A DNA stretch of 64,000 bases, from NCBI RefSeq assembly GCF_037042905.1, contig NW_026974141.1:15128001-15192000 (forward strand). The letters are read 5' to 3'. The translations under genes were made by a program, and so were the position numbers. The notes beneath the pieces were generated by a model. The model did no database searches. It worked only from the letters and a program-made list of their open reading frames with translations, and was not told where the DNA came from. Shown piece after piece: positions 367 through 60,786 of this stretch (position 1 is the first letter of the stretch; the number at the start of each line of letters is the position of its first letter). This DNA is from Lytechinus pictus (Eukaryota).

Positions 367-1552
367 CCCGGGGGGGGGGGGCACTTCCATTGACGAGTGG
401 ATACCATGTGTGACCATGGAGTTTCGAAAAGCACCCTAAACAAGTATTTTCCATGTTCTGAAAATGCACCCGTTATTAAAAGGGATACTCCGGGTTGAAA
501 ATATTTATAGCTAAATCAATAGAGTAAAATTCACTTAGCAAAATGCTGAAAATTTCATCAAAATCGGATAACGAGTAACAAAGTTATTGAATTTCAACGA
601 TTTGCATTATTCCGTAGAAACAGTTCTAGGCATGTCTTGTCTTTATGAATATGCATTAGGTGGGCTGATGATGTCACATCCCCACTTTCCTTTTTCTTAT
701 GTTATTACATGAAATCATAATTGTTTCATTTTTTCATAAATGTGAAAATAATGTGTCTCCATTTTTATGAAATAAGTTGCAGCAAATAATTTGCACTTAA
801 TCAGTTGTCAATACAAAATTCTTGATGTAGGATAATTTTGAATAAACCTAATTTCATATAATGAAATACAAAAGAACAAGTGGGGATATGACATCAACAG
901 CCCACCTAATGATCGAATATCATGAAGAAATGCCTCGAACTGTTTCACCGGAATAATGCATATTATCTTTGAAATTCAATAGCTTTATTTGTTATCCGAT
1001 TCTTATCAAATTTTCAGCATTTTGCTCTGTGAATTTTACTCTAGGCCTATTTATTGAGATACATGTATAAATATCTTCAGCCCGGAGCATCCCTTTAACA
1101 AGTATTGGCGTGTGAAACCCTACCCTTAACAAATAGAGTCTATTACTAACAAAACGGTACCCTTGACAAGTATTTCCTAATTTGACCCCCTAATCAAGTA
1201 CACAATATCTTGTTATGTCATGGATGTGATCATGGACATCGGCTTTACCTTTACTTTCACTTTGTTTAGTACCACCCCACCCACCTCGCTCAAATTGGAA
1301 TCTAAACACGTAGACTAGTGTTGGGGCAAAATCTACATCCATAATTTTAGCCTTTTTATACCCGCGCAAAAGGACCGTAGGTAAAAACATAGTTTTCAAG
1401 TGAAATATGTACCCTTTTTCCATTATTTCAGTGCTTTTGACACCCTTATTACGTTACATACGTAACGTGCCCTATCTTGAAAACGAGATCCTTTTTTATG
1501 AGTTTTTATTTTGGTCACACTCACACATGGTATCCACCTGTCAATGGAAGTG
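367..1552. mobile_element. Non-autonomous DNA transposon, CCCGGG-poly-G terminus family; right end eroded; interrupted by a TTAA element
   Basis: Ends CCCGGG(G)nCACTTCCATTGACGAGTGGATACCATG and CATGGTATCCACCTGTCAATGGAAGTG; homologous to 53322-53911. Confidence 0.85.
481..1094. mobile_element. Kolobok-like MITE nested in the element above
   Basis: TIR AGGGATACTCCGGG / CCCGGAGCATCCCT flanked by TTAA; the intact host copy at 53 kb has a single TTAA here. Confidence 0.8.
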
Positions 1553-1604
1553 TCAATCGATTCATGACATTATCACTGGATATTATTTGATCTAAAGTTA
1601 AACT

Positions 1605-2027
1605 AAAGACAGCAGTTTTTTAACATTATTTTTTTTTCTCCTCGTACCACCATTAGGGGGTTAACAATGCAAAATCCCCCAGGCTCATTGATTTTTGTCT
1701 TTATTTGATTAAAAAATATATAAAAAAGAACTGGACCAAAATAAAGATTCCCTTTTGGCCTGAAAAGCACCAAAACCCCCCAAAAAACAACTTAAATTTA
1801 AAAGGGGAAAAAACAGTGCCTTACTTCGGCTGTCGCGCAACTCCCACTTCCTTGGTTAATCTGAACTATATGGCATAAAATGGCAATGGATGATGGAGTC
1901 CCTGTATACAGATCGAGTTAGAAAATCGGTGAGTGGAGCAACAGAGTCAGAGTGCAGCAGAATAAATGTTGTTCCGCTGAACTCCAGCATTGGCTCCACT
2001 CTCGGATTTTCTAAGAGACCAAAGCTT
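1605..2027 (-). mobile_element. Degenerate copy of the TAG...CTA element family found at 12925-15390
   Basis: Shares CCACCATTAGGGG, CTTACTTCGGCTGTCGCGCAA, GAGTCCCTGTA and GAGACCAAAGCTTTT blocks. Confidence 0.75.
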
Positions 2028-2728
2028 TTTGTGAAACCTTTTTTAAAGTTAAATGGGAGCTGAATCAGCCCTTTTTTTTTAGTCTCTTGACTTGAGGGTT
2101 AACTTTGAAGATCATGTTTGGTCATTACAAGTAAGCCCACGATCATGATTTGAGAAATACAAAGGCCGATGATTCTGAAGTAAGCCCAAGATTCGCACGA
2201 TCATGTTGAATCTAACAGTTAGTTCTCGCAACAGGTCTCCCAATTCCGAGCATGTACGTCGTAGCCGACGCGACGGAGGAGCTGATCTGAGCGGCAACCC
2301 AAGGCAGCAGCAGCGCAGTCCAGCCTCGGCCGATCGAGTTTCCGTGATGAGGCGTGAGTGGTGCGACTACTAATTTTTACTTTTTACTGAAGGAAATATT
2401 AAAGTTCTTAAATCATGATATGTCTTATACACCTCACAACTAGCATCTTATGAGTATTATCTACAGTCAAATAAGATAAATACGATGAATACGAGTTTAC
2501 TACCAAACTTACATGTTCTTTTGACTTGACTCTCGGCTCGGATCGCGCAAAACTCTTCGAAGACTCAGCTCAGCATAGCACGCGCGGTATATATCACATC
2601 GATCACAACAAACAACAAGGAACGGCGTAGAGGTCGTTATCAGCTTTCCGATTTACACATCAAATAAGGCTCAAATTTTTGGGGTCCTAAAAAATATTTT
2701 CAAATTCTGAAAATTACTTTGTCATCGC

Positions 2729-2883
2729 CCCGGGGGGGCCACTTCCATTGACGAGTGGATACCATGCGCAACCATGGGGTCTCGAAAAGCACCCTAAACA
2801 CTAGACCAAAAGCTTCGGTCTCTTATGTTGGTTGTTCAGCTGAACTCCGTTGGCTTCACTCATTGTAAGTGCCCCCCCCCGGG
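2729..2883. mobile_element. Short chimeric CCCGGG-family MITE with target duplication GTCATCGC
   Basis: Both termini present; interior replaced by the left end of the TAG...CTA element (2802-2862). Confidence 0.8.
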
Positions 2884-3012
2884 GTCATCGCCTTAAGCAG
2901 TCAAACACCAGCATAAAAAAAATACACTGACGCCCCCCCCCCAGCAGCAAACATCACACTTAAAATGTACCCATCACTCCTTGCTAAACATCCAAACATA
3001 TCCTACTTCTCT

Positions 3013-3543
3013 CCCGGGGAGGGGCACTCGACCAAAAAAGTAGTGGGTATGTGCCGCGGGCGAGACAAAAAACGGGGGCCTTGGAGCGGGCTTATTGTAA
3101 AAAGCAGGGTCCTCTGAACGGGCTTCGGAACGACAAATGTTTGTGAAAACGGGGGTCCTTGGAACGGGTCACCTGTGTTGATTGCGTATTCATCCCTATG
3201 GAACGGGCATACGTGCATGCAGCTAGCCCGGTGGCACGGGCGCCGGGTGCGCTAGCGCAGATGCGATGGTCGGACAGCGCTCTGCGGCCGCTTTTCACCA
3301 AAATTGCGGCTCATTGTAGCATATCGGAACGTCGTAACGGAAAATATGCGAAGCTTTGGAGCGGATTTCTTTCTTCATTTTTCTCGATAAGATCTATGCT
3401 TTGAAGCGGCTTTCTTTGTTTTTTTTCTCAATAAGACAAAAATGCTATGCCTTGCAACGGAAATTTGAGTGTAAAAATGGGGGTCCCCTCTGCGGCACAT
3501 ACCCACTATGCATTATATACTGAGTGCCCCCCCCCCCCCCGGG
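3013..3543. mobile_element. Second CCCGGG-terminus MITE family
   Basis: TIR CCCGGGG..GCACTC..AGTGGGTATGTGCCGC / GCGGCACATACCCACT..GAGTGC(C)nGGG; CTTCTCT on both flanks. Confidence 0.8.
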
Positions 3544-12211: not shown

Positions 12212-12587
12212 GATGACGGCTTCTCGTTGTTATGTCACTGGAATTTGGGATCTCTTTTTGTATGAGTCTATCTGCTTGGTATGACTGTTTGGTCACCTAC
12301 ATTACAAGCAAAAAGAGAAAACACAGGTGACGCATACTACGAACTACAATTGCAACACAGGTACCAGGGCACTCACACAAGCATGCAAGGTTAGTTATAC
12401 TAACCTCGCACAACGCATGTCATTTCATAATGAATTTTGACGTTTTCATTCATCACACGAATGTGAGAGAATGAAACACGCCAAAATCTTCACAATATAC
12501 TAAATTTATTAATCTAAATCTTATTATTTAATTTAATTTTTAAAATGTGCTCGAGCGTATTTATAAAAAGGGATTTTAAACGCTTAC

Positions 12588-12915
12588 CTCCAAATCTCAG
12601 CCAAGACACTCCGTCCGATCCTTAATACTGCGGTGGAAATTACGCAAACAACAATCAAAATGCAAATTTTTCCTATCGAACAGTCTAGATTCAAGTCGTC
12701 GGCGCATAATAGGAAATTGTACCAAAAAAATCAACAGGTTGCATCTCACGTATAATCGCTGATGGCGCTACATCATAAAATAACGCTGAACAGCGAAAAA
12801 AAATGTGGAGCGCCTAGAACGCAACCAGCAGTACAGCATATCTGACGTAAACAAGCAAGTTTATCAAATAATATCGCGCGCCCTCTCTGTGCGTAAAGAG
12901 AAAACCAGCGAATTA
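12588..12915 (-). promoter_or_regulatory. Probable CHMP2A non-coding first exon and promoter
   Basis: Strong donor GAG|gtaagc at 12587; CpG-richer region with GATGGCG (YY1-like, about 12761) and TGACGTAA (CRE-like, 12842). Start site not determinable. Confidence 0.55.
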
Positions 12916-12924
12916 GCTCCATGC

Positions 12925-13649
12925 TAGACCAAAAGCTTCGGTCTCTGTTGTGTTATGTTGGTTGTTCCGCTGAACTACGTTGGCTCCACTCACCAAATAC
13001 ATAGACCGAAGTTAAACCGTCGTCTGTACAGGGGCTCAATGGCCACCGCTAATTTCTTGTTTTTCTCCTCGATACCGCGATATTTTCCACCAAAAGTTCA
13101 TACATATGCACCTATAGCTGAAAATGTATAAGTAACGACAGTTTCTTACCCTAAATTCCCGCTTTAAAACTGGCAATCAGGGGATTAACTCTGAAAGTTG
13201 ACACTTGCGACTCGGACTAGTGGGCAGCCATCTTGGTAATGAATAATTCATGAAAAAGTGGCCAATGGTTTTGATACGCGGTTGACCCGGAAGTTCTTCC
13301 AACGGCATATGTTTGTGTGTTATATCGACTTCGGATGAAGGAGTGAACTAGGAGCTACACGACAGCCGAGGTAAGTCGCTGTTTTTTTTCCTTTTCACTT
13401 TATTTTTCCCTCGCTTTTGGCAATTAATGCCAAGAGGGAATATTAATTCGCATATTTGTCCATTTATTTTCATATAGGCCTATATTTATGAAATAAAGAC
13501 AAAAATCGATGAGCCCCGTCGGGGGGAATTTGCATTGTACCTCCCCTAATGGTGGCAACACGCTAGCGAGCTGTCTGTGTATGAGGAGAAATTAAAAAAA
13601 TTAAAAAATGTTGAAAAACTCCTCGAAACAGACGGCTGCCAGCTGTCTA
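12925..13649 (+). mobile_element. TAG...CTA non-autonomous DNA element, long subfamily (unit 1)
   Basis: Termini TAGAC...GTCTA; flanked by GCTCCATGC at 12916-12924 and 13650-13658. Confidence 0.85.
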
Positions 13650-13658
13650 GCTCCATGC

Positions 13659-14106
13659 TAGACCAAAAGCTTCGGTCTCTGTTATGTTGGTTGTTCAGCT
13701 GAACTCCGTTGGCTTCACTCACCAAATACAGAGACCGAAGTTCTAGCGCGATCTGTACAGGGGACTCAATGGCAATATGTTTATGTACTTAAGATCGGAT
13801 AAAACGGGGAAGTGAATTTGCGCGACAGCCGAGGTAAGTCACTGTTTTTGTTCCTTTTAACTTGATTTTTCTCCGTTTTTTGGCAATTAATGCCAAGAGG
13901 GAATATTAATTTGCATTTTGGTCGCGTTAATTTTCAAAATTTTTATCCATTAAAGACAAAAATTGAATAGCCCCGACGGGGGGATTTTGCATTGCAAGTC
14001 CCCTAATGGTGGCTGCACGCTAGCGAGCCGTCTGTGTATGAGGAGAAATTTAAAAAACAAAAAAATGTTAAAAAACTCCTCGAAACAGACGGCTGCCAGC
14101 TGTCTA
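13659..14106 (+). mobile_element. TAG...CTA element, short subfamily (unit 2)
   Basis: Same termini, 448 bp; followed by GCTC and then the LINE tail. Confidence 0.85.
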
Positions 14107-14110
14107 GCTC

Positions 14111-14936
14111 TTCTTCTTCTTCTTCTTCTTTGTAGTCTGCTTCCTTCAATCCTGAAGATTCTTGCAGAACTTGGTGAAGTGTGTGTCACAAGGGTAAAGT
14201 GCATGTGCCAAATATATACATGGTGCGAGTAAAAACAGGTATGGATCTAGCTGTTGTTGCCTTTCGTCAGTTGCAGACGAAAGGCTTCGGTTGATGGGGC
14301 TGTCACAACATTTACTGGGAGAGTGTTCCACATCTTGATGGTTCTGGGGAAGAAGGAGCATTGATGTTGTTGGGTCCGTGATTGTGGCATGAGATATCCT
14401 TGAATGTGAACAGCTCTTGTTGATCTAGTACATTTGGTGATGTATGCATCAGAGTTGAATGGGACAAGCTCGTTGTGGATCTTGTAGAACATCACAAGGC
14501 GAGAGATTTCCCGTCGTTGTTGAAGGGATGTCCATCCTAGCTCCTGCAGCATCGATGACACACTTGATGTATTGTGATATCGATTCAGTGTGAATCTAGC
14601 TGCTCTGCGTTGGATCATTTCAAGCTTGTGGATGTTCTTGGAGGTTGATGGATCCCAGACAGTAGATGCATATTCCACCAAAGGTCTGACGAGTGATTGG
14701 TATGCTGTAGCTTTCAACTTGGGAGAGTTTACTCGCAGGTTTCTTCGTAGGAAGGCAAGGGTGTTGTTAGCCTTTTGACAAACATTGCTGATGTGACTGT
14801 TCCATTTTAGGTCTGATGTGATAGTGACACCAAGATATTTTGTTGCTTCTACAGGAGTAAGGATAGCATCTTTGAGTTTGTACTGGTGTACAATCCTGTT
14901 TCGCTTCCTGGTGACTGTGATGACTTCACAGTCCAG
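14111..14936 (-). mobile_element. 5'-truncated LINE (CR1/L2-group) ORF2 C-terminus with 3' UTR and (GAA)n tail
   Basis: Uninterrupted frame 14930 to 14247: KYLGVTITSDLKWNSHI...YQSLVRPLVEYASTVWDP...LEMIQRRAARF...FFPRTIKMWNTLP; AGCTC duplicated at the ends. Confidence 0.9.
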
Positions 14937-14946
14937 AGCTCCATGC

Positions 14947-15390
14947 TAGACAGCTGGCAGCCGTCTGTTTCGAGGAGTTTTTAACATTTTTTTTTTTAAT
15001 TTCTCCTCGTACACAGACGGCTCGCTATCGTGCAGCCACCATTAGGGGACTTACAATGCAAAATCCCCCCGTCGGGGCTCTTCAATTTTTGTCTTTTAAT
15101 GAATCAAACTTTTGAAAATTATCGCGACCGAAATGCAAATTAATATTCCCTCTTGGCATTAATTGCCAAAAAACGGGGAAAATCAAGTTAAAAGGAACAA
15201 AAACAATGACTTACCTCGGCTGTCGCGCAACTTCACTGCCCTGTTTTATCCGAACTTAATACACATAAACATATGGCCATTGAGTCCCCTGTACAGATCG
15301 CGCTAGAACTTCGGTCTCTGTATTTGGTGAGTGTAGCCAACGGAGTTCAGCTGAACAACCAACATAACAGAGACCGAAGCTTTTGGTCTA
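14947..15390 (-). mobile_element. TAG...CTA element, short subfamily, inverted (unit 3)
   Basis: Reverse-complement homologue of unit 2; GCTCCATGC at 14938-14946 and 15391-15399. Confidence 0.85.
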
Positions 15391-15859
15391 GCTCCATGCC
15401 TGCTTCGACATCAAGCAAAATCATCGATATAAAGTACCAGAAAGACAGAGAGGAAATGAAATTGGCTTAATATCGTTTGGTAAGTTTCATATCCAAAGCT
15501 TATCTCAATTTAAATAGGTATCTATTTCTAATTTTAGACAAGACGAATAAACTTATTGCAAGTGCCGTGCCAGTGGTTATCTTGTGCACGGCACATGGGC
15601 TATTATAATTCAAACTCACTTGCCTGATCAGGCAAACATTATTTCAATAAATTCTAACATTAATAAAAAAAATAGAATTTTTACTTGGGAACAACTGCAG
15701 AATACCCGGACACTGCGTTACCTTATCGTTGGAGAGCCAACGCACAACGATGTACTTAAGCTATCAAATCAGAAAATCAGCTATAATAAATAATTGAATG
15801 ATTTACAACTTACAAGTATTTTTTGAATAGATTCTAAGTGTTCAGACTGCACTGTAACG

Positions 15860-17559
15860 CTAACGATGCGAGCGCGCGCGATTAGTATGTAGACCAACAG
15901 TGTCCGCGATGCCAACGATGTGTATATTTTCGTAGTACGTGTAGGCCAACACAGTCCGCGATGCTAGCGGTGCGTTGGTGTCCGTAGTACAGGCCAACAC
16001 TGCCCGCGATGCCAACGATCTATATATATATCTGTGTGCATCTGTAGTATGTAGGCCGACATTGCCCGCGATGCCAACGATGTGTATATTTTCGTAGTAC
16101 GTGTAGGCCAACACAGTCCGCGATGGTAGCGGTGTGTTGGTGTCTGTAGTCGGTACAGGCCAACACTGCCCTCGATGCCAACGATCTATATCTGTGTTCT
16201 GTAGTATGTAGACCAACAGTGTCCGCGATGCCAACGATGTGTATATTTCCGTAGTATGTGTAGACCAACATTGCCCGCGATGCCAACGATGTGTTGGTGT
16301 CTGTAGTACAGGCCACCATTGGGCAAAATCATATTGAGGTATGATCGATTACAATTTTTTTCTCGAGCGGGGCCTATATCACGAGTATGCCCAACATTGC
16401 CCTCGATGCCAACGATGCGATCATATCTGTAGTACGTTGCCTATGTAAACCAACATTGCCCGCCATGGCAACGATGTGTTGGTGTCTGTAGTACATGCCA
16501 ACAGTGCCCGCGATGCCAACGATGCGATCATATCTGTAGTTTCCTATGTAGACCAACATTGCCCGCGATGCCAACGATACGTTGGTGTCTGTACTGTAGA
16601 GTACAGGCTAACATTGCCCTCGATGCCAACGATGTGAATGTATCTTTAGCAGGTATATATAGGCCAACAACGCCCGCGATGCCAACGATGTGTTGGTGCC
16701 TGTAGTAGTAAATGCCAACAGTGCCAACGATGCCAACAATGTAAATGTATCTTTAGTACGTATAGGCCAACAGCGCCGGCCAGGATGCCAACGATGTGTT
16801 GGTGTCTGTAGTATAGGCCAACCTTGCCCGCGATGCCAACGATGTGAATGTATCTTTTGTATGTATAGGCCAACAGCGCCCGCGATGCCAACGATGTGTT
16901 GGTGCCTGTAGTAGATGCCAACAGTGCCAACGATGCCAACAATGTAAATGTATCTTTAGTACGTATAGGCCAACAGCGCCGGCCAGGATGCCAACGATGT
17001 GTTGGTGTCTGTAGTACAGGCCAACCTTGCCATCGATGCCAACGATGTGAATGTATCTTTAGTAAGTATAGGCCAACTTTGCCGGCGATGCCAACGATGT
17101 GAACGTATGTTTAGTATGTATATACCAACAGCGCCCGCGATGCCAACGATGTGTTGGTGCCTGTAGTAGATGCCAACAGTGCCAACGATGTGAATGTATC
17201 TTACATAGGCCAACATTGCCGGCGATGCCAACGATGTGAATATGCCTGTAGTAGAGGCCAACATTGCCGCGATGCCAACGATGTGAATATGCCTGTAGTA
17301 GAGGCCAACATTGCCGGCGATGCCAACGATGTGAATGTATCTTTAGTAAGTATAGGCCAACTTTGCCGGCGATGCCAACGATGTGAATGTATGTTTAGTA
17401 TGTATATACCAACAGCGCCCGCGATGCCAACGATGTGTTGGTGCCTGTAGTAGATGCCAACAGTGCCAACGATGTGAATGTATCTTACATAGGCCAACAT
17501 TGCCGGCGATGCCAACGATGTGAATATGCCTGTTGTAGAGGCCAACATTGCCGGCGATG
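15860..17559. repeat. Complex minisatellite on a GCCAAC...GATGCCAACGATGT core with higher-order repeats
   Basis: Dozens of 40-50 bp subunits; higher-order periods of 206 bp (16690/16896) and 284 bp (17151/17435); runs into an N gap. Confidence 0.95.
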
Positions 17560-17814
17560 NNNNNNNNNNNNNNNNNNNNNNNNNNNNNNNNNNNNNNNNN
17601 NNNNNNNNNNNNNNNNNNNNNNNNNNNNNNNNNNNNNNNNNNNNNNNNNNNNNNNNNNNNNNNNNNNNNNNNNNNNNNNNNNNNNNNNNNNNNNNNNNNN
17701 NNNNNNNNNNNNNNNNNNNNNNNNNNNNNNNNNNNNNNNNNNNNNNNNNNNNNNNNNNNNNNNNNNNNNNNNNNNNNNNNNNNNNNNNNNNNNNNNNNNN
17801 NNNNNNNNNNNNNN
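17560..17814. other. Assembly gap
   Basis: Run of N. Confidence 1.
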
Positions 17815-41600: not shown

Positions 41601-44600
41601 TGAATTACCATCATAACTCTGTAAGTATATTGGTCTAGTTCATAAAACTTGGACATAAGAGTCATCAAGTATCACTGAACATCTCATGCGAGTTTCGGGT
41701 CACATGACCAAAGTCAAAGGTCATTTAAGGTCATTGAACTTTGGCCATTTTAGAGGTAATTATTAGATTGCTGTCATAACTTTCAAAGTTTATAGATATA
41801 GTGTATAAAATGTGGATATAGGGGTAATCAAGTATCACTGACAAGTTTTAGGTCACATGATCAAGGTCAAATGTCAATGAACGTAGTATTGTATCATTAT
41901 ATGAATGGTGTTTTTGTGAATAATTATTTTATAGTAGTTTTCAAAGTCAGCACTACTGCTATATTGAATTGCATGATGCAGGTGAGACAGCCAGAGGCAT
42001 TCCACTTGTTAGAGTATTTATTCCTCTTTTTTGCTATGAATACACCAATATTTTCTTGTATGATTTGTTACTTCTTTTAAAATTTCCAATCATGGAGTAT
42101 GTATTATACACAGTGCGTGACACTAGCGCCGGTCCGATGGTCATAAACTAGTAAAAATCACTTTCGGGCCAGTAACTTGTCGCATAAAAAGAACAAGTAA
42201 ATTCTTGCATACTGGCTCATGTTTAAAAGGATGAATTATCAAGTTTTCAAGTAAAGTCATTTCACATGTTTTTTTACCGATCTCACTACAGCAGGCTGTC
42301 GATTGTTACATTGAGAAAAAATTAAAAAAAAATTCTCTTTTTTGTCAAAAAATACTTTTTTTTCCTTCTAAGAATACTTTTTTGTTGTTGTAGAAGGTTG
42401 GCAGCCCTGGTTCTATCACAAATTGAACTTTTTATTAACACAGGTAAATTAACTTGAAATTTTTAACATGAAAAAATCTCTCTTGTTCTTTATGTGACAG
42501 ATATTTTCTGATAGAAAATTGTGTCAGCTTCTCTTCACGAACGATGAGAGTTGTTCTAATTGGATGATGTTTATTAAGATGTCCAAAGACCACAACCTAA
42601 TGGCATTTCAGAGCGGAGCTCACATCTATTTTACATCACTTACAAAAATTCAACCTGGTGAAGAGCTCGTTGTGTGGTATTCCAAGGAGTATGCAAGACT
42701 AAGAGGTAAAGAAGAATATCTATGCCAACTTCAGACACATATAGTTGTGCTCAAAATTTGTGAACCCCACCACAAAAAGTGTTGAATGTAGAAAACAACA
42801 CAACAATGTCCGGCAAGCCCATTAGCTGATAATAGTTGTCGTGAAAATCCTGTCTTTGTTTTTAAACCCTGCTTTTGAATGGGGGACAGTGGCCTTATAA
42901 TATTAATAATAATAATATATGGGATTTGTAATGTGCCAAATCCACTCGGCAGAGTGCCCAAAGGGCAGTGAAAGAAAGAGAAAAGTACACATATATTAAT
43001 AATAGATTCAAGAACAATTAAGAGTAGGAAGCATTTAACAGACCTGTCTTTGCATTTTTAAAATTTGTCATTCCCAAATGAATTGGGCTGGTCGTATACA
43101 CCTTATTGCAAATTTTATTGTTGAAACCACAAAGTAACGCAGTAGCTCTGGGACCTGTCTTACAAATGGTTAAGATTGATCCGATCAACCACAACTATGG
43201 AAATCCAGCAACGTCAACATCTAAAATACATGTTTGTTCTAAATATTTTGTAGATCATGGTCTAGTGGTTAATAATAATAATAATAATAATAGCTGGATT
43301 TATAAAGCGCTTTTTGCCAGAGGATACAAAGCGCTGCTATTATTACCCCGGCTTTAGCTCGAGCTACCATCACCGGCGCTCAGTGCATTCAAGGAATTAT
43401 TCCTGCCGGGTACCCATTCACCTCACCTGGGTCGAGTGCAGCACAGTGTGGTTAAGACTCTTGTCTTTCAATCTGAAGGACGTGGGTTCGATTCCAAGCA
43501 ATGACCTGTTTTCCTTCAGCAAGAATTTACCCACATTGTGCTGCATTCAACCCAGGTGAGGTAAATGGGTACCAGCAGGAAGTAATTCCTCAAAAAGCTG
43601 TGCGCACCGGAATCGGTAGACAAGCTTAGCCGGGGGAATTATAGGAGCGCCTTGAGCACCTAGCAAGGTGGATACGTGCGCTATAGAAATCCTTTTTTTA
43701 ATTATTATTATGTGATGTATAATTATACATTCAGTGTTTTCTTGAATATTCAGTGTACTTCTCTTCGTTTACAAAGGACATCATGCAAATTTCCTTGTCA
43801 CTGTTGGATATCCATATAGTATCAGATGATCGGATCAATCGTAACTCTTTGTAAGACAGGGTCCTGGGGCCGGTAATGCAAAGCTTAGCAATGGTCGTAG
43901 AACACTTTTCTATGATTGATTCCATTGACTACAATGTAGAATCAATCGTCAAAATCAAGCGTACAATTAATCGCTAACCTTTGTGTTACGGGACCCTGGT
44001 GAGTGTTTCATCAACATTTTTGTCCGACAAGTTGTCAGATCTGACAACTTTCCTTGAATGTGATTGGCTGAGAACCACTGTTACCATAGTAACTGTTGGA
44101 TAAAGCAGAAATGTGCCTCTTTCTCAATTATAGATTACATAGCATCAATTTAAATTATTACTATTATCTGTGATACATTCTGTAAATGTCAACAATTTGA
44201 TTATTTCAGGCATCAGGGACTATAAGGGCACCATGAAATGTCAGAAATGCCATGAGAGCTTTCCAGGCAACACTCACCTCCAGTGTCACATGGCTGAAGC
44301 CCACCCTTCCTCTCAACAAGACAAGATGTACAAGTGTGACGTGTGCTCCTACGTGTTCTCCTCATCATCCAAGCTAAGAACTCACCTCTTGACGCATCTT
44401 GGGGTGAAACCGCATCGATGTAAGATCTGCCACAAGGGATTCACAGACCGTAGTAACCTCAGGGCTCACTCACTTATACATGCAGGTATGGTGTGCATCA
44501 ACTTGTCGGGTTTTGCAAGAAACATACTTTCAATTAACAATGATTATAATGATAATAATATGCAACATCTATACAGCGCTTAATACGATGCTACTGAGTG

Positions 44601-47600
44601 ATGCATACTATTACCCTGGCTTTATCATGTCTACCCTGATCAGGCGCATCGATCTCTCAAGGAATTCCTACAGGGTACCCATTAACTGGGTAGAGAGTGT
44701 CAAATGTAGATGAATGCCTTGCCAAAGGATGCAAGTGCTGCAATGAGAATTGAACCTTGGACCTTGTGGTGCAAAGTCCGGAGACTTATCCACTGAGCCA
44801 TAACACCTCTACAATTGCAAATTAGATTTGGTGTATAAATAGTTAATATATCATGTGTGACCATCCACTCCAATACTAACAAATACTCAAAATGAATTTT
44901 GAGATTTTCATTGAGTTTGAAAAGGCACATCCTAAGCTTTTGAATGATATATGACTTGTCAAAAATTGATCAACGATAACATAGACCATTATTTGATTGA
45001 ATGTAGAAGAATCTAAGCGAGAGCTCCTAAAAATAAGGAGTAAACAACGTTTGAAGTCTTGGGTTCACTCAAGCATGAGATGTGAACACTGTGCAATTTC
45101 AGTGAAATTCCAACCAGTCGAAAAACACTTGAGTCAAAGAAACTTTTGTATCTTGTTTTCTTTACATCTTGAAATTTTGACAATATAAAGAAAAAAAAAG
45201 TTCAGATAAGTTTTTTTTTTTTAATAACTATTTGTTTTTTTGAAAATAAATTACTATTTGGGCTATTTACAGAGAACCTTCCCTGATGACTTACTATTTG
45301 CTTATTCTCACTTGTAAAGTGTAAAATGGTATGGCACCAAAATATCTACAAAACCCTGTCATGCCTTATACACCAGCTCGTAGCCTAAGATCATCACACC
45401 AGCAACTTCTTAGGACTCCCAAGACACGTGTAGCATATGGTGCGCGAGCTTTCTCTGCCTCAGCACCTTCTCTCTGGAATAATTTGCTGAAGAATTATAC
45501 CATCACTGGAGACCTTCAAATTTTTAACTGAAGTCTTACCTTTTCTAACAGTATTAGTTTTTGGCACTTTGACACTCATCCAAAGTCTCTCATTCTTTCT
45601 TTTCTTGTGTGCCTCGGAATAGAATATTTCTAGATAGATGGCGCTATATAAATGCCTATTTTTTATTTGGAGTGGCTGGTCACTTAAAGATTAATAGGTG
45701 TTAGATCAAGTAAAATGGGTGCAGTATAATTGGAGATTAGAAAAAGCTATTATTTGGATAAAATGCCAGTACGACCAAATGAACAGAAGATGGAAAGTTG
45801 GGAATTTTGAGGTAAATTTTCCAGCATGTCGGAAAATTTAACAAAAGTTCAATTTCTCAGCATTATCTTCCTACATGTAAATTGATATGTGTGATTAATG
45901 AAAGTTTTGATGCTCTGAAATTGTTAAGGCCGTTCATAAAGTAAAGTATTGAAGATTGAAGAAAAATGGGGTCTGCATTTTGAAAAGGTTGATTACTGTA
46001 CGGAACTGTCCTTAAGGAGATTCTCACAAAACCAACAGCTAAATATGGCACAAATGAAAAAAAACAAGATAAGAGGGTATGGTCATTTTGTCTGTTGCAC
46101 TGTTTGTAGTCTCGTAACAGCGAAGATATCGAACGATGCAGCCTCTTTCCCTCAATAGTAGGCTATGTTATTCAATCACTGACACATGCAGACTTTGCAT
46201 TCCCTTGTCAAAACTCTCCTCTGCCGAAAAACTTTTTGCTGTAGCAGCTGCCAAGACTTGGAATGCTATCCCTCTTTCTATAAGAAATGCTTCCAGTGTT
46301 CTTGGCTTCAAATCTTCCCTTAAGACATACCTTTTTCCTCAATAATTAATTTCCCTTTTTATCTTGAATATTGTAGTTATTAAATTATTATTCATGTTAA
46401 ATTATTCATACATTGTACGCGCTATTGTACTTTTTGTTTTTAGCGCCTCTAAATATCCATTATTATTATTATTATTATTATGTTACCATTGCTAGTAATA
46501 ACCAGGGGTGTGAGAGTTCAGATTTTTATCTGATTTCAGATTTTTTTGTTTTGATTTTCAGCTTAATTTCAGCTTATTTTGGGCCTTCCTCTGTACAAAA
46601 AGTATGGGAGCTCTTTCTTTTTCAGACTTTTTCAACACTCTTCAGCTTTTTTCAGATCTTTTTATTTGTGACCACTCACACCCCTGGTAATAACGCCTAA
46701 TTGTGATCATTGTTACAGGAGTGAAGAAGTTCACTTGTGAGACATGCAACAAGAGTTTCCGCCAGAAAGCCCATTTGGTATCTCATCAGGTTACTCATAC
46801 AGGAAAACGAGACCTTCAGTGTTTCGTCTGTGAGAGGATGTTTGGTAGACAGAGTGATCTCAGTTATCACATGAAACAACATAGAGAAACTAAGAAAGTA
46901 AGCTTAACTGTGTTTGTATGTCTCTGCCCACTGTAGATGGTTGTCAGGAGCATTATGTTTTTGGCTCATCCATCCATCTCGTTTCTACCCGTCCAGCTTT
47001 TGTTCTTGCAATTACTACCAAAATCATGATTATGAGCCTATAATTATACTACAGGCATAATATTTATTTTCCTCTTACTCTAATAACCACATCTACTATT
47101 GCTGAATTCCAAAATGTCTACTTGTGATACACCACTGTAGTACAAATGTATATTAAAGCATCAGCATGAATTAAAGCCCACCCACTTAATTTTCAGGCAA
47201 TAAATCCCTTCTTTTGTGTACAAATGAGATTAATTCTAAGTGATATTCAGCTCAATCCCTTCAAATTTTCTCAGCTGTTCATCTTGGTGATCATGTCTTT
47301 CTACAAACCCAAATTCTTACTGGAAGTTAATAGTTTTCCTTCATTCTTTTTTCGTCTCTATAGTTGAGTTGCCCTGTATGTGACAGAAGATTTTACAAAG
47401 ACTGCCAGCTGATAAGGCATATGAAGATTCACAGTGGACAAAGGGATTACCAATGCCACATTTGTAACAAAGGATTCATCACTAAATACCATCTCAGTAG
47501 ACACCTGAAGTCCTGTGAGCGGTATGAGCGATTCCGACGTAAGTCATGGCCTAATAGCTTGGACAGCATAGCAGGAGTGGTTGGCCAATCAAGTGAAGAA

Positions 47601-48857
47601 AGACATTTTGTAAGGCCCACTGCTCCTGGAGACATGCAAGAAATCATTCCCCCAAGGAGGAGACGTCAAATGCCAGAGGTTCAGGAAGGGACTTCCTCAA
47701 GGATTTTGAGAAGCTCTCGTGGGCGACCTATCAAACCGAAGCCTATTCCTTCATACATGGCTCAGCTCGTAAGCCCACCTTCAAGAGGATTGGGAAGTGC
47801 AAAGAGAAAGAAGCGGGTGCCAAGGAAGGTTAGCCGACTTCCTAATAGGGAGCTTGACTCTGGTTCCCTAGCACACACTGTTTCTGTGACTTTGTATGAA
47901 GTACAACCTGGTAACACCCAAGAGATTGGGCCAGGTGTAGGTCCACCAACAGATGGTGTGCAACAGATGGTTCAAGGTGCCATTTCAGAGAAAACCAAGC
48001 CGACAATACCACCTGATCATTCATCATCAATGTCTGTGTATGGTGTCCAGGGGGAGACATCAGAAGGTAGTTCCGACATGGCTGTTGATCAGCAACAGCA
48101 GGGCAGCACTTTGTCTCAACTAGCTATTTCTGTCCCTCAAGAATCATCCATAGTTCTTGATTGTGACAATTATGTTTCATCCTCTTCAGTCACCCAACCT
48201 CACCTGCAATCATCCTACGCTTACACCTCTTCTGACCCTCAAGGAGATGATGGAATCCATGATGGATCCCTGACAACACCTCTCTTTGATCTAGGTGAAG
48301 GGCCAACCATGTCCTCTGCAGTCCAGGTGATGCCAACTTACAACTCCCAATCCTTCTCACTGGAAGAAGAAGACAGCCATTCAGATGCATTTGCTGGACC
48401 TCAAGAGCATTGCAATCCATCCGGCTCATTTTTCATGACCGATGCTCCCATGTCGGACCCTGTTGCAAGCAGCTCATCACGGAGCCTTCGCCATCAGACC
48501 CATGTTGATTCACTCGCCGAAGACAACCATGCCGGTACCTTTGCAGAAGCTCGGGAACATTGTTCTCCTGCACCGGCATTATTCATGACCGATGCTGCTA
48601 TGCCTGACTCTGTTGCCAGTACGTCCTCTCAGAACCTTGGTCATGGGGGTCATAGAAGCTCCTTGACAGAGGATTCCCTTTTCTCTATGGATCCCTCTCA
48701 TGAGTCAGGGACATCACTTTCCCAACACACAGGAGACAGCATAGATGACATCAGTGTAGACTTAAGAGCCATCGAGAGGGCGCTAGACTCGGATGAAGAG
48801 GAGCCATGTACTGATGAAAGAAGGGGAGATTCCCCATCAGAGAACATTGAGGAATGA
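35343..48857 (+). CDS. PRDM4: PR/SET domain zinc finger protein 4 orthologue, spliced, about 1339 aa
   Basis: Exons 35343-35687, 36401-36536, 37512-37683, 38388-39334, 39750-39899, 40267-40382, 42501-42705, 44210-44485, 46719-46897, 47364-48857 total 4020 nt, phases consistent. Zinc knuckle WCISC..CCPH followed by ETRARQSLP; PR domain FGP...NWMMF...NL.A...EELVVWYSKEYA; 7 zinc fingers including QKAHL and terminal TKYHLSRHLKSC (C2HC), as in vertebrate PRDM4. Confidence 0.9.
36401..36536 (+). CDS. PRDM4: PRDM4 coding exon 2
   Basis: cag|ACT CCT GGA...TCA G|gtagta. Confidence 0.8.
37306..37481. other. Assembly gap in a PRDM4 intron
   Basis: Run of N. Confidence 1.
37512..37683 (+). CDS. PRDM4: PRDM4 coding exon 3
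   Basis: tag|GT TCC AAC TGG...CAA AG|gtaggg; open frame. Confidence 0.8.
38116..38233. repeat. Perfect inverted repeat (56-bp arms, 6-nt loop), probably a Penelope-like element terminal remnant
   Basis: Arms 38116-38171 and 38178-38233; carries a minimal hammerhead-like motif (see findings). Confidence 0.85.
38388..39334 (+). CDS. PRDM4: PRDM4 coding exon 4 (P/Q/S/T-rich, contains 26-aa repeats)
   Basis: cag|C TTG CCA...TCA T|gtaagt. Confidence 0.85.
39750..39899 (+). CDS. PRDM4: PRDM4 coding exon 5 (zinc knuckle and start of PR domain)
   Basis: tag|GG TGT; encodes (W)CISCRAIVKCCPHQKPAVVVADKAVETRARQSLPDLLMLKPSIAIPGET; donor G|gtaaat. Confidence 0.9.
40267..40382 (+). CDS. PRDM4: PRDM4 coding exon 6 (PR domain)
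   Basis: Encodes GVYAKREILPNTRFGPVVG...HKTWR; donor gtaaga. Confidence 0.92.
40842..42010 (+). mobile_element. Helentron-associated (HINE/DINE-1/Tsp-like) element with internal tandem repeats
   Basis: Subterminal IR TGTCTTACCTGCA / TGCAGGTGAGACA, short GGC microsatellite, about six 150-190 bp repeats, 3' end CTTGTT, no obvious target duplication. Confidence 0.75.
42501..42705 (+). CDS. PRDM4: PRDM4 coding exon 7 (PR domain)
   Basis: Encodes IFSDRK...SNWMMFIK...EELVVWYSKEYARLR; donor G|gtaaag. Confidence 0.92.
43151..43863. mobile_element. PIF/Harbinger-like MITE with nested SINEs
   Basis: CTG|GGACCTGTCTTACAAA...TTTGTAAGACAGGGTC|CTG. Confidence 0.7.
43253..43712 (+). mobile_element. tRNA-derived SINE split by an antisense SINE fragment (43273-43447)
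   Basis: A box TGGTCTAGTGG at 43258, B box GGTTCGATTCC at about 43485; GTGGTTAA duplicated around the inner SINE. Confidence 0.8.
43867..43995. mobile_element. Second Harbinger-like MITE abutting the first
   Basis: GGGCCGGTAATGCAAAGCTTAGC / GCTAACCTTTGTGTTACGGGACC, flanked by CTG. Confidence 0.65.
44210..44485 (+). CDS. PRDM4: PRDM4 coding exon 8 (zinc fingers 1-3)
   Basis: Three C2H2 fingers; cag|GC...GCA G|gtatgg. Confidence 0.93.
44545..44810 (-). mobile_element. Degenerate tRNA-derived SINE
   Basis: TGGCTCAGTGG A box on the minus strand, GGGTACCCATT core, AAT tail. Confidence 0.6.
45310..45660 (+). mobile_element. L2-type LINE 3' fragment
   Basis: Translates as PYTPARSLRSS...LLRTPKTRVAYGARAFSASAPSLWN. 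Confidence 0.75.
46170..46480 (+). mobile_element. L2-type LINE 3' fragment with (TAT)n tail
   Basis: Translates as FAVAAAKTWNAIPLSIRNASSVLGFKSSLKTYLF. Confidence 0.75.
46503..46686. mobile_element. hAT-like MITE with perfect 8-bp target duplication GTAATAAC
   Basis: TIR CAGGGGTGTGAG / CTCACACCCCTG; duplication at 46495-46502 and 46687-46694. Confidence 0.9.
46719..46897 (+). CDS. PRDM4: PRDM4 coding exon 9 (zinc fingers 4-5)
   Basis: cag|GA GTG...AAG AAA|gtaagc. Confidence 0.93.
47364..48857 (+). CDS. PRDM4: PRDM4 last coding exon (zinc fingers 6-7 and long disordered tail)
   Basis: tag|TTG AGT TGC; TGA stop ends at 48857. Confidence 0.93.
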   Translation: MSCPVCDRRFYKDCQLIRHMKIHSGQRDYQCHICNKGFITKYHLSRHLKSCERYERFRRKSWPNSLDSIAGVVGQSSEERHFVRPTAPGDMQEIIPPRRRRQMPEVQEGTSSRILRSSRGRPIKPKPIPSYMAQLVSPPSRGLGSAKRKKRVPRKVSRLPNRELDSGSLAHTVSVTLYEVQPGNTQEIGPGVGPPTDGVQQMVQGAISEKTKPTIPPDHSSSMSVYGVQGETSEGSSDMAVDQQQQGSTLSQLAISVPQESSIVLDCDNYVSSSSVTQPHLQSSYAYTSSDPQGDDGIHDGSLTTPLFDLGEGPTMSSAVQVMPTYNSQSFSLEEEDSHSDAFAGPQEHCNPSGSFFMTDAPMSDPVASSSSRSLRHQTHVDSLAEDNHAGTFAEAREHCSPAPALFMTDAAMPDSVASTSSQNLGHGGHRSSLTEDSLFSMDPSHESGTSLSQHTGDSIDDISVDLRAIERALDSDEEEPCTDERRGDSPSENIEE

Positions 48858-58190: not shown

Positions 58191-59439
58191 TTAAAAGTGA
58201 GAAATTATACATATATTTGGCAACACGTTCTATTTCAGTGTTGTGAAAGAAAGTGGGGGTACGAGAATAATGGTAGGTGTAAAACAATTGGTTCCTCAGA
58301 ACTATCCTCCCTTTTGAAAACTTTTGTTATTTAAAATGTTCATTTTATTCCATCAAGTTTTTAAAAGGAAGGATAGCTCTGGGGAACTTCGATTTAATCT
58401 ACGCCTACCATTACAAAATCCGATTAATGTTTTTTGCCAAATAAACTTTTATTAACGCCTACAATTTTCGACAATCCTTCATCTTCTTCAGGTCAATGAC
58501 ACAATCATTTACGTCTGAAGAAGATCGTTAAATATTGAGGCTTTTAATAGGTGTGATAGGGGAAAATGCATTCATTGAATTTGTTTTGTTATAATACATA
58601 TAGCAAATCAATGATATCAACAGTCGATGTCAATTTTCTGGCATCAGTGAAAAGTATGACTGAGGGTACAAATTTGTGCTGACTAGGAATAAGTCCCATA
58701 GATAAATGAATATTGAGCTTTTGTTTAGTTTCTTTTCAAAATACGTTCACTTTTAGCCTGTTTCTGCTTCAGTTGTGCAAAAAATATTTCGAAGTGAATT
58801 AACTAACAAATTAACTTGTTAGGTTCAAAAGTTAGAGGTAATATTATCGATAAATGAAGGATTATTTGTGAAAGCAAAATAGGAAGGCCGATACGCATCG
58901 CATTCTTTCAGGGGGCTTCTGGCACAAAACGGGGCATTAATGGGCATCGGATCCTAGTATATTCAAAGTATCAAAGTGAGCAAAAACTGGAAACAAGCAA
59001 TCATGATTATTTGGATCTATATTAAAGTATAAGAAACGCGTTGACCGGCATACTCGATTAGAGGAAGAGTACCGGGTCGATCAAGAGGTTTGATAAAAAT
59101 ATTTTGCAATGCAGGGTGTTCTGTATGTCAGCGTGAGGCTCCTCTTTCTCATCTTTAAGAACAATTAGCAGTTTGGCCCGCAGTTTGGGCTGTTGATGAA
59201 TTCTCTACGCATATAATACCTACTATGATTGTTTTATTTCATTTTTGTTTACTGCAGACACCATTTAGAGAGGGCAAGCCTAATAAAAGTTATTTCAAGT
59301 TCATGGACATCGGACAAGAACAACACAATATAAGAAGCCCCCGGTCCAACGTTCTACTTGCGTCCATCGAATTCATAACGGTCCAAAAGTGAAGAGGAAG
59401 CATACCTGTTTTAAAAGTCTGAATAAACTGATAGCAAAC

Positions 59440-60786
59440 ATGGAGATGTGCATAAAGCGTAGTATCGGTCGGACAGGACTTCGATTATTGGTAGTTGCAT
59501 TGGTCATAGTGGTTAATTCTTCTGAATATGTCACGGATGTCATGGAGCAGACATCAGGAACCGTGATCACAGATATAGAGGTACCATGGCCGACGTCATC
59601 ATCCGAGAATAGTTGGGCCAACTTTGCAGCTACTCCGATCACTCAGAGGACATCACCATCTGATGAAATGGCGAGTAACACTGTACGTCCATTGCCGGAG
59701 AACTCTTTGACGTCTGACCGAAGTCAAAGACAGTCAGCAGCCATTCAAGTATTTAGCAGCCACTCGACCACTGTCTATTTCAATGATCTGCCAACAGATT
59801 TAAATGCCACGGGGACTGGTGATTGGCAATGGGAATTTTCTTGGGATTGGAACATCATCATGCAACTGATTCTCTCTCTAGTGGGTGTCTTTGGCAATGC
59901 TATGGTAGTCGTTGTCATTGGGGTACGCAAATTCAACTCGAATTCGACAGATGTCCTCATCCTAGCCCTAACCATCTCGGATTTGCTGACATCTTTGTGC
60001 AATATCCCAGTTCCTCAAGCAGCTCAGGTTCCTGCATCAATCCTAGGGGCGTTGTACTGCCGCATCATCCTTTATGAGTTCCTCACTTGGGTTTGTGTCA
60101 TTACATCTACAATCATTCTAGTGGGATTGTCCGTGGAACGTCTGGTTGCTGTCCGCTACCCCCTTCGCTTCCGCGAAATCTTCTCCATCCGACGCGTTTA
60201 CATCTTCATCGTCTCAACATGGTTATTCTCCCTACTCTCCTGTTGCTATTATTTCATTGATATCAAGCCGATGCTGGATGAGAACTTTTCCGAGGAAAAC
60301 ACTTGTGTTGCGACTGCCTCCAATGTCCCATCGCGACTGAGGCAATTGAAAGTATTCACTTTAATCAATTTTTTGATACGGTTAGTTATTCCAGTGGTGC
60401 TGATGATCTTCACCCAGACTGCAATGGCCTACTCTCTTAATCTGCAGTCTCGTCGTCACGATAAAACATTGTCTCAGAAATCCGGTCAGTCCTTTCACAT
60501 CAAGGCCAGAAACCGCATCATCAAGGTCATGCTCACTGTAGTTATTGCGTTCATCATCTGCTGGGCACCAAGTCAGATTGCATGGGTAATCATCTCTTTT
60601 AACGGATCCGCTAAAGGCTACCTTGACAGCACCCTCAGGGATATCCTCAACCTCATCACCTTTATAAACTCTTCAATCAACCCATTCATCTACACATCAC
60701 AGTACCCCAAATTCCGTGCTGCTATTAAAGAAATTTTCATCGGTAAGCCACAAAACGACGCACCACTGTTTGCAGCGAATGTATAG
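59440..60786 (+). CDS. Rhodopsin-like (class A) GPCR, galanin/allatostatin-A receptor-like orphan, single coding exon
   Basis: Seven TM segments with GN (TM1), LTISDLL (TM2), Cys in TM3 and ECL2, ERL (DRY variant), W (TM4), P (TM5), CWAP (TM6), NSSINPFIY (TM7). First in-frame ATG at 59440; an acceptor tgcag at 59257 implies an upstream UTR exon. Confidence 0.92.
   Translation: MEMCIKRSIGRTGLRLLVVALVIVVNSSEYVTDVMEQTSGTVITDIEVPWPTSSSENSWANFAATPITQRTSPSDEMASNTVRPLPENSLTSDRSQRQSAAIQVFSSHSTTVYFNDLPTDLNATGTGDWQWEFSWDWNIIMQLILSLVGVFGNAMVVVVIGVRKFNSNSTDVLILALTISDLLTSLCNIPVPQAAQVPASILGALYCRIILYEFLTWVCVITSTIILVGLSVERLVAVRYPLRFREIFSIRRVYIFIVSTWLFSLLSCCYYFIDIKPMLDENFSEENTCVATASNVPSRLRQLKVFTLINFLIRLVIPVVLMIFTQTAMAYSLNLQSRRHDKTLSQKSGQSFHIKARNRIIKVMLTVVIAFIICWAPSQIAWVIISFNGSAKGYLDSTLRDILNLITFINSSINPFIYTSQYPKFRAAIKEIFIGKPQNDAPLFAANV

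What the first reader, a model, noticed from the sequence alone, without database searches (positions are those of the whole stretch)
12916..15399. One 9-bp site hit repeatedly: a polarised stack of TAG...CTA elements separated by identical GCTCCATGC duplications
Seen: the order is GCTCCATGC (12916) - unit 1 (12925-13649, +) - GCTCCATGC (13650) - unit 2 (13659-14106, +) - GCTC[LINE]A - GCTCCATGC (14938) - unit 3 (14947-15390, inverted) - GCTCCATGC (15391). All 9-mers face the same way although unit 3 is flipped. Unit 1 is a longer, different subfamily, and units 2 and 3 differ at many positions. Inference: tandem duplication cannot easily explain this. It fits three independent integrations that each re-duplicated the same target, giving a repeat-insert-repeat array logically similar to CRISPR adaptation or tandem Tn7 insertion. 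Established: target-specific eukaryotic DNA transposons exist (Dada, Pokey), and long target duplications are described for AcademH, Zisupton and MULE elements; I cannot assign a superfamily. The family terminus at 2802 has a different flank (CCTAAACAC), so targeting may be to an existing element end rather than a fixed sequence.
Basis: partly seen in the sequence, partly recalled or inferred. Interest (0 to 1): 0.8.

Follow-up and report, generated by a model that had tools for sequence, protein, structure and literature searches.

The report
Three transposons stacked in one target
Three copies of a very abundant small sea-urchin jumping gene landed one after another in exactly the same 9-base target, a "multiple insertion" already described for fly P elements but here seen three-deep, in both orientations, in a little-studied transposon group.

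Summary
GCTCCATGC occurs exactly four times in the window (0.27 expected). It bounds three TAGAC...GTCTA elements: unit 1 (725 bp, +), unit 2 (448 bp, +) and unit 3 (444 bp, inverted). A 5'-truncated LINE-like fragment splits the third 9-mer.

Public contigs show the 9-mer is a target-site duplication, not part of the element. Other copies of this highly repeated family break exactly at the TAG/CTA ends into unrelated flanks. A related sea urchin has the two flanks joined through a single 9-mer.

Unit 1 is a different subfamily. Units 2 and 3 differ almost only in their interiors, and at least one difference is a family-wide variant. Separate insertions therefore fit better than local duplication plus inversion.

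The 9-bp duplication suggests a non-autonomous AcademH-type (or MULE-type) DNA transposon. No transposase lies in the window, so this is unproven.

Same-site "double insertion" that leaves the duplication in the junction is already documented for P elements (PMC5932611). The CRISPR and Tn7 analogies are not needed.

Whether resident copies attract newcomers or the site is simply a hot spot is unresolved. The scan flagged similar stacks at other places in this genome; I could not check them.

The parts
12916..12924 (+). Target-site duplication, copy 1 (GCTCCATGC)
   Evidence: a single copy in the empty-site contig, X7 record 25
12925..13649 (+). Unit 1: 725-bp non-autonomous TAGAC...GTCTA element of a longer subfamily
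   Evidence: Copies elsewhere match 12968-13263 with no differences but carry about 221 extra bp (records 2 and 26).
13650..13658 (+). Target-site duplication, copy 2
13659..14106 (+). Unit 2: 448-bp element of the abundant short subfamily
   Evidence: Contigs of other copies break into loose ends exactly at 13659 and 13649.
14107..14110 (+). First 4 nt (GCTC) of duplication copy 3, re-duplicated by the LINE insertion. The LINE's own duplication is AGCTC at 14106-14110.
14111..14936 (-). 5'-truncated LINE-like retroelement fragment with a (GAA)7 tail at 14111-14131, inserted into duplication copy 3
   Evidence: Longer, near-identical copies run past the truncation point (records 4 and 22). There is no Pfam match, so the class rests on the tail, the 5-bp duplication and an ORF2 C-terminal-like ORF.
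14938..14946 (+). Target-site duplication, copy 3 (complete copy)
14947..15390 (-). Unit 3: 444-bp element, inverted, 94.6% identical to unit 2
   Evidence: Contigs of other copies break into loose ends at 15390/15391.
15391..15399 (+). Target-site duplication, copy 4
1603..2043 (-). Older, about 70%-identical relative of the family, flanked by the 10-nt direct repeat TAAAGTTAAA (1593-1602 and 2044-2053)
   Evidence: family D14
2802..2862 (+). 61-63-bp copy of the family's 5' end, internal to a 154-bp element (2730-2883) bounded by the 9-bp repeat GTCATCGCC

Best explanation
This is a multiple insertion. A cut-and-paste-type (DDE) transposase that makes 9-bp staggered target cuts placed three non-autonomous TAGAC...GTCTA elements, one after another, into the same 9 bp. 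The elements came from different source copies: one of a long subfamily and two of a short one. The first insertion turned one GCTCCATGC into two. Each later insertion used one of the existing copies and added one more. The orientation of each insert relative to the target is free, so unit 3 is flipped while all four 9-mers point the same way. Later, a 5'-truncated LINE-like element entered the 9-mer at the centre of the unit 2/unit 3 inverted pair, making its own 5-bp duplication. The elements are probably deletion derivatives driven by an AcademH-type (less likely MULE-type) transposase encoded elsewhere. Shown: the anatomy, the duplication nature of the 9-mer, and the subfamily differences. 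Inferred: the enzyme class, the order of events, and why the same 9 bp was reused.
For: (1) There are four identical 9-mers against 0.27 expected, and the element ends are exact.

(2) An empty site exists. X7 record 25 runs from 12918 straight into 15394, which gives one 9-mer between the two flanks. An X16 contig also joins 12913 to 15394.

(3) The 9-mer is not part of the element. Dozens of contigs per run break exactly at 12925, 13659, 13649 and 15390 into flanks with only 0.37-0.46 agreement.

(4) Unit 1 differs from unit 2 by K2P 0.215 plus about 277 bp, yet the first 30 and last 36 bp are identical. That is the pattern of divergence between active lineages, not of decay in place.

(5) Only 1 of 21 substitutions between units 2 and 3 lies in the terminal 151 bp (binomial P = 0.002). 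The T/G difference at 13817 is a variant shared with many other copies: G appears in 5, 39, 34 and 2 contigs of the four runs.

(6) The same behaviour is seen elsewhere. An X2 contig has two family 5' ends head-to-head with exactly 9 nt (GTTAAATCC) between them (table 5c).

(7) There is precedent. P-element tandems carry the 8-nt duplication in the junction and arise by double insertion (PMC5932611).

(8) AcademH makes 9-10-bp duplications (PMC10045372).
Against: No read from the assembled individual was shown to cross the internal junctions. The junction-word search had only 4 sampled words, and no run of the window's likely species was listed as holding them. Units 2 and 3 are each other's closest relatives among the few copies I could see, and a genome-wide tree was not possible. 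The near flanks are themselves moderately repeated in the reads, so the 'empty sites' could be paralogous rather than allelic or orthologous. No transposase is present in the window, so the enzyme class is unproven.
Confidence: 0.75

Rival explanations
1. Local hop. Unit 1 arrived independently, but units 2 and 3 are siblings. A resident copy excised from, or was copied off, one sister chromatid or homologue and re-inserted into the 9-bp duplication of the copy at the same locus, as in P-element local transposition. The two copies then diverged in place.
For: Units 2 and 3 are 94.6% identical and are the closest pair seen. Polarised changes are split evenly, 9 versus 10, as expected for two copies of equal age. 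Head-to-head P tandems arise in local-jump screens (Tower et al. 1993, as cited in PMC5932611).
Against: The differences avoid the 151 terminal bp (P = 0.002). Six changes on the unit 2 branch cluster in 44 bp. The state at 13817 is shared with most other family contigs. All three points suggest differences that predate insertion.
Confidence: 0.12
2. There was a single insertion. Unequal exchange or slippage between the two 9-bp duplications then made a tandem, and one unit was later inverted precisely.
For: Unequal exchange between flanking duplications does give element-duplication-element tandems. McGurk and Barbash propose that dimers expand this way.
Against: It cannot give different subfamilies: unit 1 differs from unit 2 by K2P 0.215 and a 277-bp indel, with identical ends. 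Inverting one unit exactly between its duplications would need recombination across a 5-bp terminal repeat.
Confidence: 0.06
3. Assembly artefact: reads of dispersed copies were wrongly chained at this locus.
For: The family is extremely repetitive. No listed contig bridges the internal junctions. One search found no clear holder of the unit 1/unit 2 junction words.
Against: An artefact would not create four exact copies of a locus-specific 9-mer in the correct register with both flanks. It would also not leave a LINE duplication that restores the 9-mer when the LINE is removed.
Confidence: 0.04
4. The 9-mer belongs to the element, or is the core site of a site-specific recombinase (Crypton- or integron-like integration).
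For: Identical short sequences at every junction are what core-site recombination would give.
Against: Flanks of other copies are heterogeneous right at the TAG/CTA ends. Another stack uses a different 9-mer. An asymmetric core would flip together with unit 3, but it does not.
Confidence: 0.03

Closest known systems
Double insertion of P elements in Drosophila (McGurk & Barbash 2018, PMC5932611). The two-element singed-weak allele is a related case: PMC7176646 confirms two P elements there, while the shared 8-bp detail is from my memory of Roiha et al. 1988.
   Same: Complete elements abut with exactly one duplication-length copy of the target in the junction and the same sequence outside. Both head-to-tail and head-to-head forms occur. 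Each arises by a repeated hit on one site.
   Different: Here the duplication is 9 bp rather than 8 bp and the transposon group is different. There are three elements, of two subfamilies, in mixed orientation. P dimers are explained by strong sequence and promoter hot spots; here the flanks of family copies show no strong consensus.
AcademH DNA transposons (Kojima 2020, as cited in PMC10045372)
   Same: AcademH makes 9-10-bp target duplications and occurs in sea urchins (the latter from my memory of that paper). Unverified scan notes report AcademH-type elements with TAGAC termini in this genome.
   Different: These copies encode nothing. Sharing of termini with an autonomous AcademH was not tested here. 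No same-site reuse has been described for AcademH, to my knowledge.
Mutator-like elements (MULEs)
   Same: They make 9-bp duplications. Maize Mu shows repeated insertion at identical positions in hot spots (Dietrich et al. 2002, from memory).
   Different: Typical MULEs have terminal inverted repeats of 100 bp or more. Here only 5 bp are inverted, and each end carries its own small palindrome.
Tandem casposons and bacterial IS dimers at one target (PMC4779613 appeared; I did not read it)
   Same: Element-duplication-element arrays arise from repeated use of one target.
   Different: Those are prokaryotic systems with defined sequence targets or active junction intermediates.

Membership tests
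Same-site multiple insertion (transposon-duplication-transposon tandems, McGurk & Barbash 2018) | Complete element ends are separated by exactly one duplication-length copy of the target, identical to the outer flanking copies | tested here: met
   There are four identical 9-mers, and the ends are intact at every junction once the LINE is removed.
Same-site multiple insertion (transposon-duplication-transposon tandems, McGurk & Barbash 2018) | The unoccupied site carries a single copy of the target | tested here: met
   X7 record 25 joins 12918 to 15394. It may be orthologous or paralogous.
Same-site multiple insertion (transposon-duplication-transposon tandems, McGurk & Barbash 2018) | The units are separate arrivals, not copies of each other | tested here: inconclusive
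   This is clear for unit 1. It is favoured for units 2 and 3 (P = 0.002 clustering; shared variant at 13817), but no genome-wide tree was possible.
AcademH | 9-10-bp target-site duplication | tested here: met
   9 bp here; a 9-nt spacer in another stack; the criterion is from PMC10045372
AcademH | Academ-type DDE transposase plus helicase in the autonomous partner, with termini shared by these units | not testable with these tools
   No transposase in the window. Scan notes s1-324989 and s1-317485 are unverified leads.
MULE / Mutator | 9-10-bp duplication | tested here: met
MULE / Mutator | Long terminal inverted repeats | tested here: not met
   Only TAGAC/GTCTA is inverted. Non-TIR MULEs do exist, so this weakens the assignment without excluding it.
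hAT | 8-bp duplication | tested here: not met
   The duplication is 9 bp. Contigs of other copies break into loose ends exactly at the TAG/CTA boundaries.
Site-specific (Tn7/attTn7-like, Dada- or Pokey-like) targeting | Most copies sit in one defined target sequence | tested here: not met
   Flank agreement is 0.37-0.46 over 8-48 contigs per end.

The most novel reading that the evidence does not exclude
Same-site reuse is a built-in property of this family. The transposase, possibly AcademH-type with its helicase, would be drawn to the cleavage register of a resident copy's end, so newcomers integrate exactly into the resident's 9-bp duplication. This would systematically build stacks that seed foldback composites, palindromes and satellite arrays in sea-urchin genomes.
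Probability: 0.3. Interest if true: 0.7.

Novelty: new member of a known kind. Interest (0 to 1): 0.42.

Why it matters
Repeated hits on one 9-bp register are far too rare to be chance for a family without a strong target consensus, so something directs them. If resident copies attract newcomers, that would be the first insight into how the unstudied AcademH-type transposase chooses targets. It would also explain how inverted pairs, foldback elements and transposon-derived tandem arrays start in echinoderm genomes. If the site is merely a hot spot, this is one more example of a process already shown in Drosophila.

Tried and rejected
- Rfam (gathering threshold over the whole window, and E up to 10 over the locus) and tRNA scans gave nothing. 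My first thought, that the GAG|GTAAGT plus stem plus AUUUUG pieces were a spliced-leader or snRNA gene, has no support.
- Two exact-pattern scans of metagenome contigs for the family returned zero matches.
- I searched the protein collection with the 59-aa ORF that reads across the unit 1 / 9-mer / unit 2 junction, hoping to find other stacks. There were no candidates.
- No transposase or autonomous copy is in the window. The long ORFs are C2H2 zinc fingers, a GPCR and unknowns.
- The flanks have no other copy in the window.
- A window-wide scan for 9-mer/TAG...CTA/9-mer found only this locus.
- The junction-specific run search had only 4 sampled words and was uninformative.
- Pfam does not name the LINE ORF. 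The protein atlas gave only weak leads to eukaryotic clusters, some carrying reverse-transcriptase domains.
- The AcademH paper (PMC7165386) is not held.
- A reading as a TA-duplicating Tc1-like element is rejected, because it cannot create the repeated 9-mers.
- Fold-back replication is rejected, because it would also invert the 9-mer and the flank.

Full report
**What is there**

The sequence reads, from left to right:
- left flank;
- GCTCCATGC (12916);
- unit 1 (12925-13649, +);
- GCTCCATGC (13650);
- unit 2 (13659-14106, +);
- GCTC, then an 826-bp insert (14111-14936);
- A, then GCTCCATGC (14938);
- unit 3 (14947-15390, inverted);
- GCTCCATGC (15391);
- right flank.

The 9-mer occurs only at these four places in 64 kb, always on the + strand. 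The chance expectation is 0.27, and 0 of 100 shuffles reach four.

All three units begin with the same 23 nt (TAGACCAAAAGC...) and end with the same 21 nt (...CAGCTGTCTA). Only TAGAC/GTCTA is inverted between the two ends. Each end carries its own small palindrome: AGACC...GGTCT at the 5' end and an 8-bp stem at the 3' end.

**The LINE-like insert**

The insert lies on the minus strand and ends in (GAA)7. It is flanked by AGCTC on both sides (14106-14110 and 14937-14941). Removing it restores unit 2 - 9-mer - unit 3 exactly.

Its 156-aa ORF looks, to my eye, like the C-terminal part of a LINE ORF2. Pfam does not name it. Contigs of near-identical copies continue past its 5' truncation point (records 4 and 22). 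I therefore call it a 5'-truncated LINE-like element. This is a reasonable reading, not a proven one.

**The 9-mer is a target-site duplication**

I laid Logan contigs of four public runs on 12400-15900. By the scan's own notes the genome is a sea urchin, named there as Lytechinus pictus; I did not verify the species.

- The family is extremely repeated. Between 1,289 and 15,177 contigs were laid in three of the runs.
- Contigs from other copies stop matching exactly at 12925, 13659, 13649 and 15390. They continue into flanks with only 0.37-0.46 agreement (8-48 contigs per row). The TAG and CTA ends are therefore the true element boundaries, and GCTCCATGC does not travel with the element.
- In run X7 (organism B), a 455-nt contig (record 25) runs from 12705-12918 directly into 15394-15590. 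This gives the two flanks joined through one copy of the 9-mer, that is, an empty site.
- Run X16 (organism C) is the only run covering the unique right flank without differences, so it is probably the window's species. It also has a contig joining 12913 to 15394, but with CGGGG in place of TAGCT. This could be a missing-stack allele, an excision scar or a paralogue. The near flanks are moderately repeated, so I cannot decide.

**Separate arrivals or local copying?**

Unit 1 differs from unit 2 by K2P 0.215 and about 277 extra bp. Yet its first 30 and last 36 bp are identical to those of unit 2. Contigs elsewhere match unit 1 perfectly over 292 bp while carrying a further roughly 221 bp (records 2 and 26). 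Unit 1 is thus a member of another, still-young subfamily and cannot be a decayed tandem copy of unit 2.

Units 2 and 3 are 94.6% identical. Several observations bear on their origin:
- Only 1 of 21 substitutions lies in the 151 terminal bp (binomial P = 0.002).
- Six changes on the unit 2 branch cluster within 44 bp.
- The terminal regions are also the parts conserved between subfamilies.
- At 13817, unit 2 carries the T found in most family contigs. Unit 3, unit 1 and the old copy carry G, which also appears in 5, 39, 34 and 2 contigs of the four runs. This difference is a family-wide variant, not a private mutation.

These points favour two different source copies. A sibling origin by a local hop is not excluded, because the changes are evenly split (9 versus 10) and I could not build a genome-wide tree.

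Tandem duplication plus inversion is unlikely. It cannot produce different subfamilies, and it would need an inversion exactly across a 5-bp repeat.

**Is reuse more than chance?**

This is a rough inference. The summed depth on the unit is about 10^4 times that of single-copy contigs in run X2, and the tool warns that depth is not copy number. I assume on the order of 10^4 copies and a genome of about 1 Gb (the size is from my own knowledge).

Under those assumptions:
- A random insertion re-hits an existing 9-bp register with probability about 2x10^-5.
- About 0.1 doubles are expected genome-wide.
- About 10^-6 to 10^-5 triples are expected.

Yet this locus is a triple. One search also shows another pair of family ends head-to-head with exactly 9 nt (GTTAAATCC) between them, besides pairs with 3-nt and 24-nt spacers. 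First-stage notes of this scan report further stacks (s1-317572, s1-322131, s1-322119; unverified).

About half of the contigs at the 5' end carry C next to TAGAC (41 versus 45 contigs breaking at 15391 and 15390). Both known 9-mers are G-N7-C. This suggests a mild symmetric target preference, which is not enough to explain exact reuse.

**Mechanism**

The best-supported mechanism is ordinary DDE-type integration with a 9-bp stagger, repeated at one register.

Two causes remain open, and I give them roughly even odds:
- **Intrinsic hot spot.** This is what was shown for P-element dimers, whose junction motifs match the target consensus better than solo sites do (PMC5932611).
- **Attraction by the resident copy.** Transposase bound at a resident end, or a local hop from the same or the sister locus, would set the register. 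I note that G-N7-C duplications make CTAG at both junctions.

The lack of any flank consensus leans towards the second cause. It does not prove it.

Before the LINE arrived, the unit 2/unit 3 pair was a palindrome of about 450 bp per arm with a 9-bp spacer. Such structures are fragile (Leach 1994, as cited). A LINE landing at the exact centre and widening the spacer fits that picture. This is inference.

**Which transposon**

A fixed 9-bp duplication excludes hAT (8 bp), P (7-8 bp) and TA- or TTAA-duplicating groups. It fits MULEs and AcademH. AcademH is stated to make 9-10-bp duplications in PMC10045372.

Scan notes report an AcademH-type element with TAGAC termini (s1-324989) and an intact AcademH (s1-317485) in this genome. 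These are leads I could not test, because no transposase lies in this window and the rest of the genome is out of reach of these tools.

**Comparison and verdict**

Same-site double insertion that leaves the duplication in the junction is established for P, hobo, jockey and R1 in Drosophila. This locus is therefore a new example of a known process, in another superfamily and phylum. It is unusual in being three-deep, of mixed orientation and built from two subfamilies.

The CRISPR and Tn7 comparison is not warranted. The finding would become interesting if a genome-wide count shows a spike of 9-bp spacings, which would reveal directed homing by a never-studied transposase.

No read-level confirmation of the internal junctions in the assembled individual was obtained. 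However, an artefact would not produce four in-register copies of a locus-specific 9-mer.

Noticed in passing
window 2721-2892: A 154-bp short element (2730-2883) with G/C-run inverted ends is bounded by an exact 9-bp direct repeat, GTCATCGCC (0.09 expected). Its interior contains the first 61-63 bp of the TAGACC family. It may be a chimeric MITE from another group that makes 9-bp duplications. A further inverted copy of its end lies at 3013-3028.
   Followed up: partly
window 1593-2053: An older copy, about 70% identical to the family (1603-2043, minus strand), is flanked by the 10-nt direct repeat TAAAGTTAAA. Its ends differ from TAGAC/GTCTA and it extends about 11 bp beyond the canonical 5' end.
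   Followed up: partly
window 15883-17559: A tandem array with a 52-bp basic period (higher-order periods 103, 162, 203 and 284 bp) begins 480 bp right of the stack and runs into the assembly gap at 17560-17814.
   Followed up: no
window 12913-15394 (run X16 contig): In the run that best matches the window's species, a contig lacks the whole stack and has CGGGG in place of TAGCT at the site. It could be an excision scar, a divergent empty allele or a paralogue.
   Followed up: partly
window 13535-13538 joined to 15041-15047, and 14059 joined to 15002 (joints on opposite strands): Contigs in two runs join the family's 3' region to itself in inverted orientation. Foldback-type derivatives of the family therefore exist, possibly descended from inverted stacks like units 2 and 3.
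   Followed up: no
window 13259-13263 (records 2 and 26): Copies of the unit 1 subfamily elsewhere are identical over 292 bp but carry about 221 extra bp at this point. Unit 1 is therefore an internal-deletion derivative.
   Followed up: no
window 1526-1552 and 2740-2766: A 27-nt inverted repeat, 93% complementary, with arms 1.2 kb apart. One arm is the subterminal part of the short element at 2730-2883.
   Followed up: no
window 44170-44583, 47364-48857, 59389-60786: Long ORFs with C2H2 zinc fingers (two) and a rhodopsin-family 7TM receptor (Pfam E = 7e-36). These are ordinary genes unrelated to the finding.
   Followed up: no
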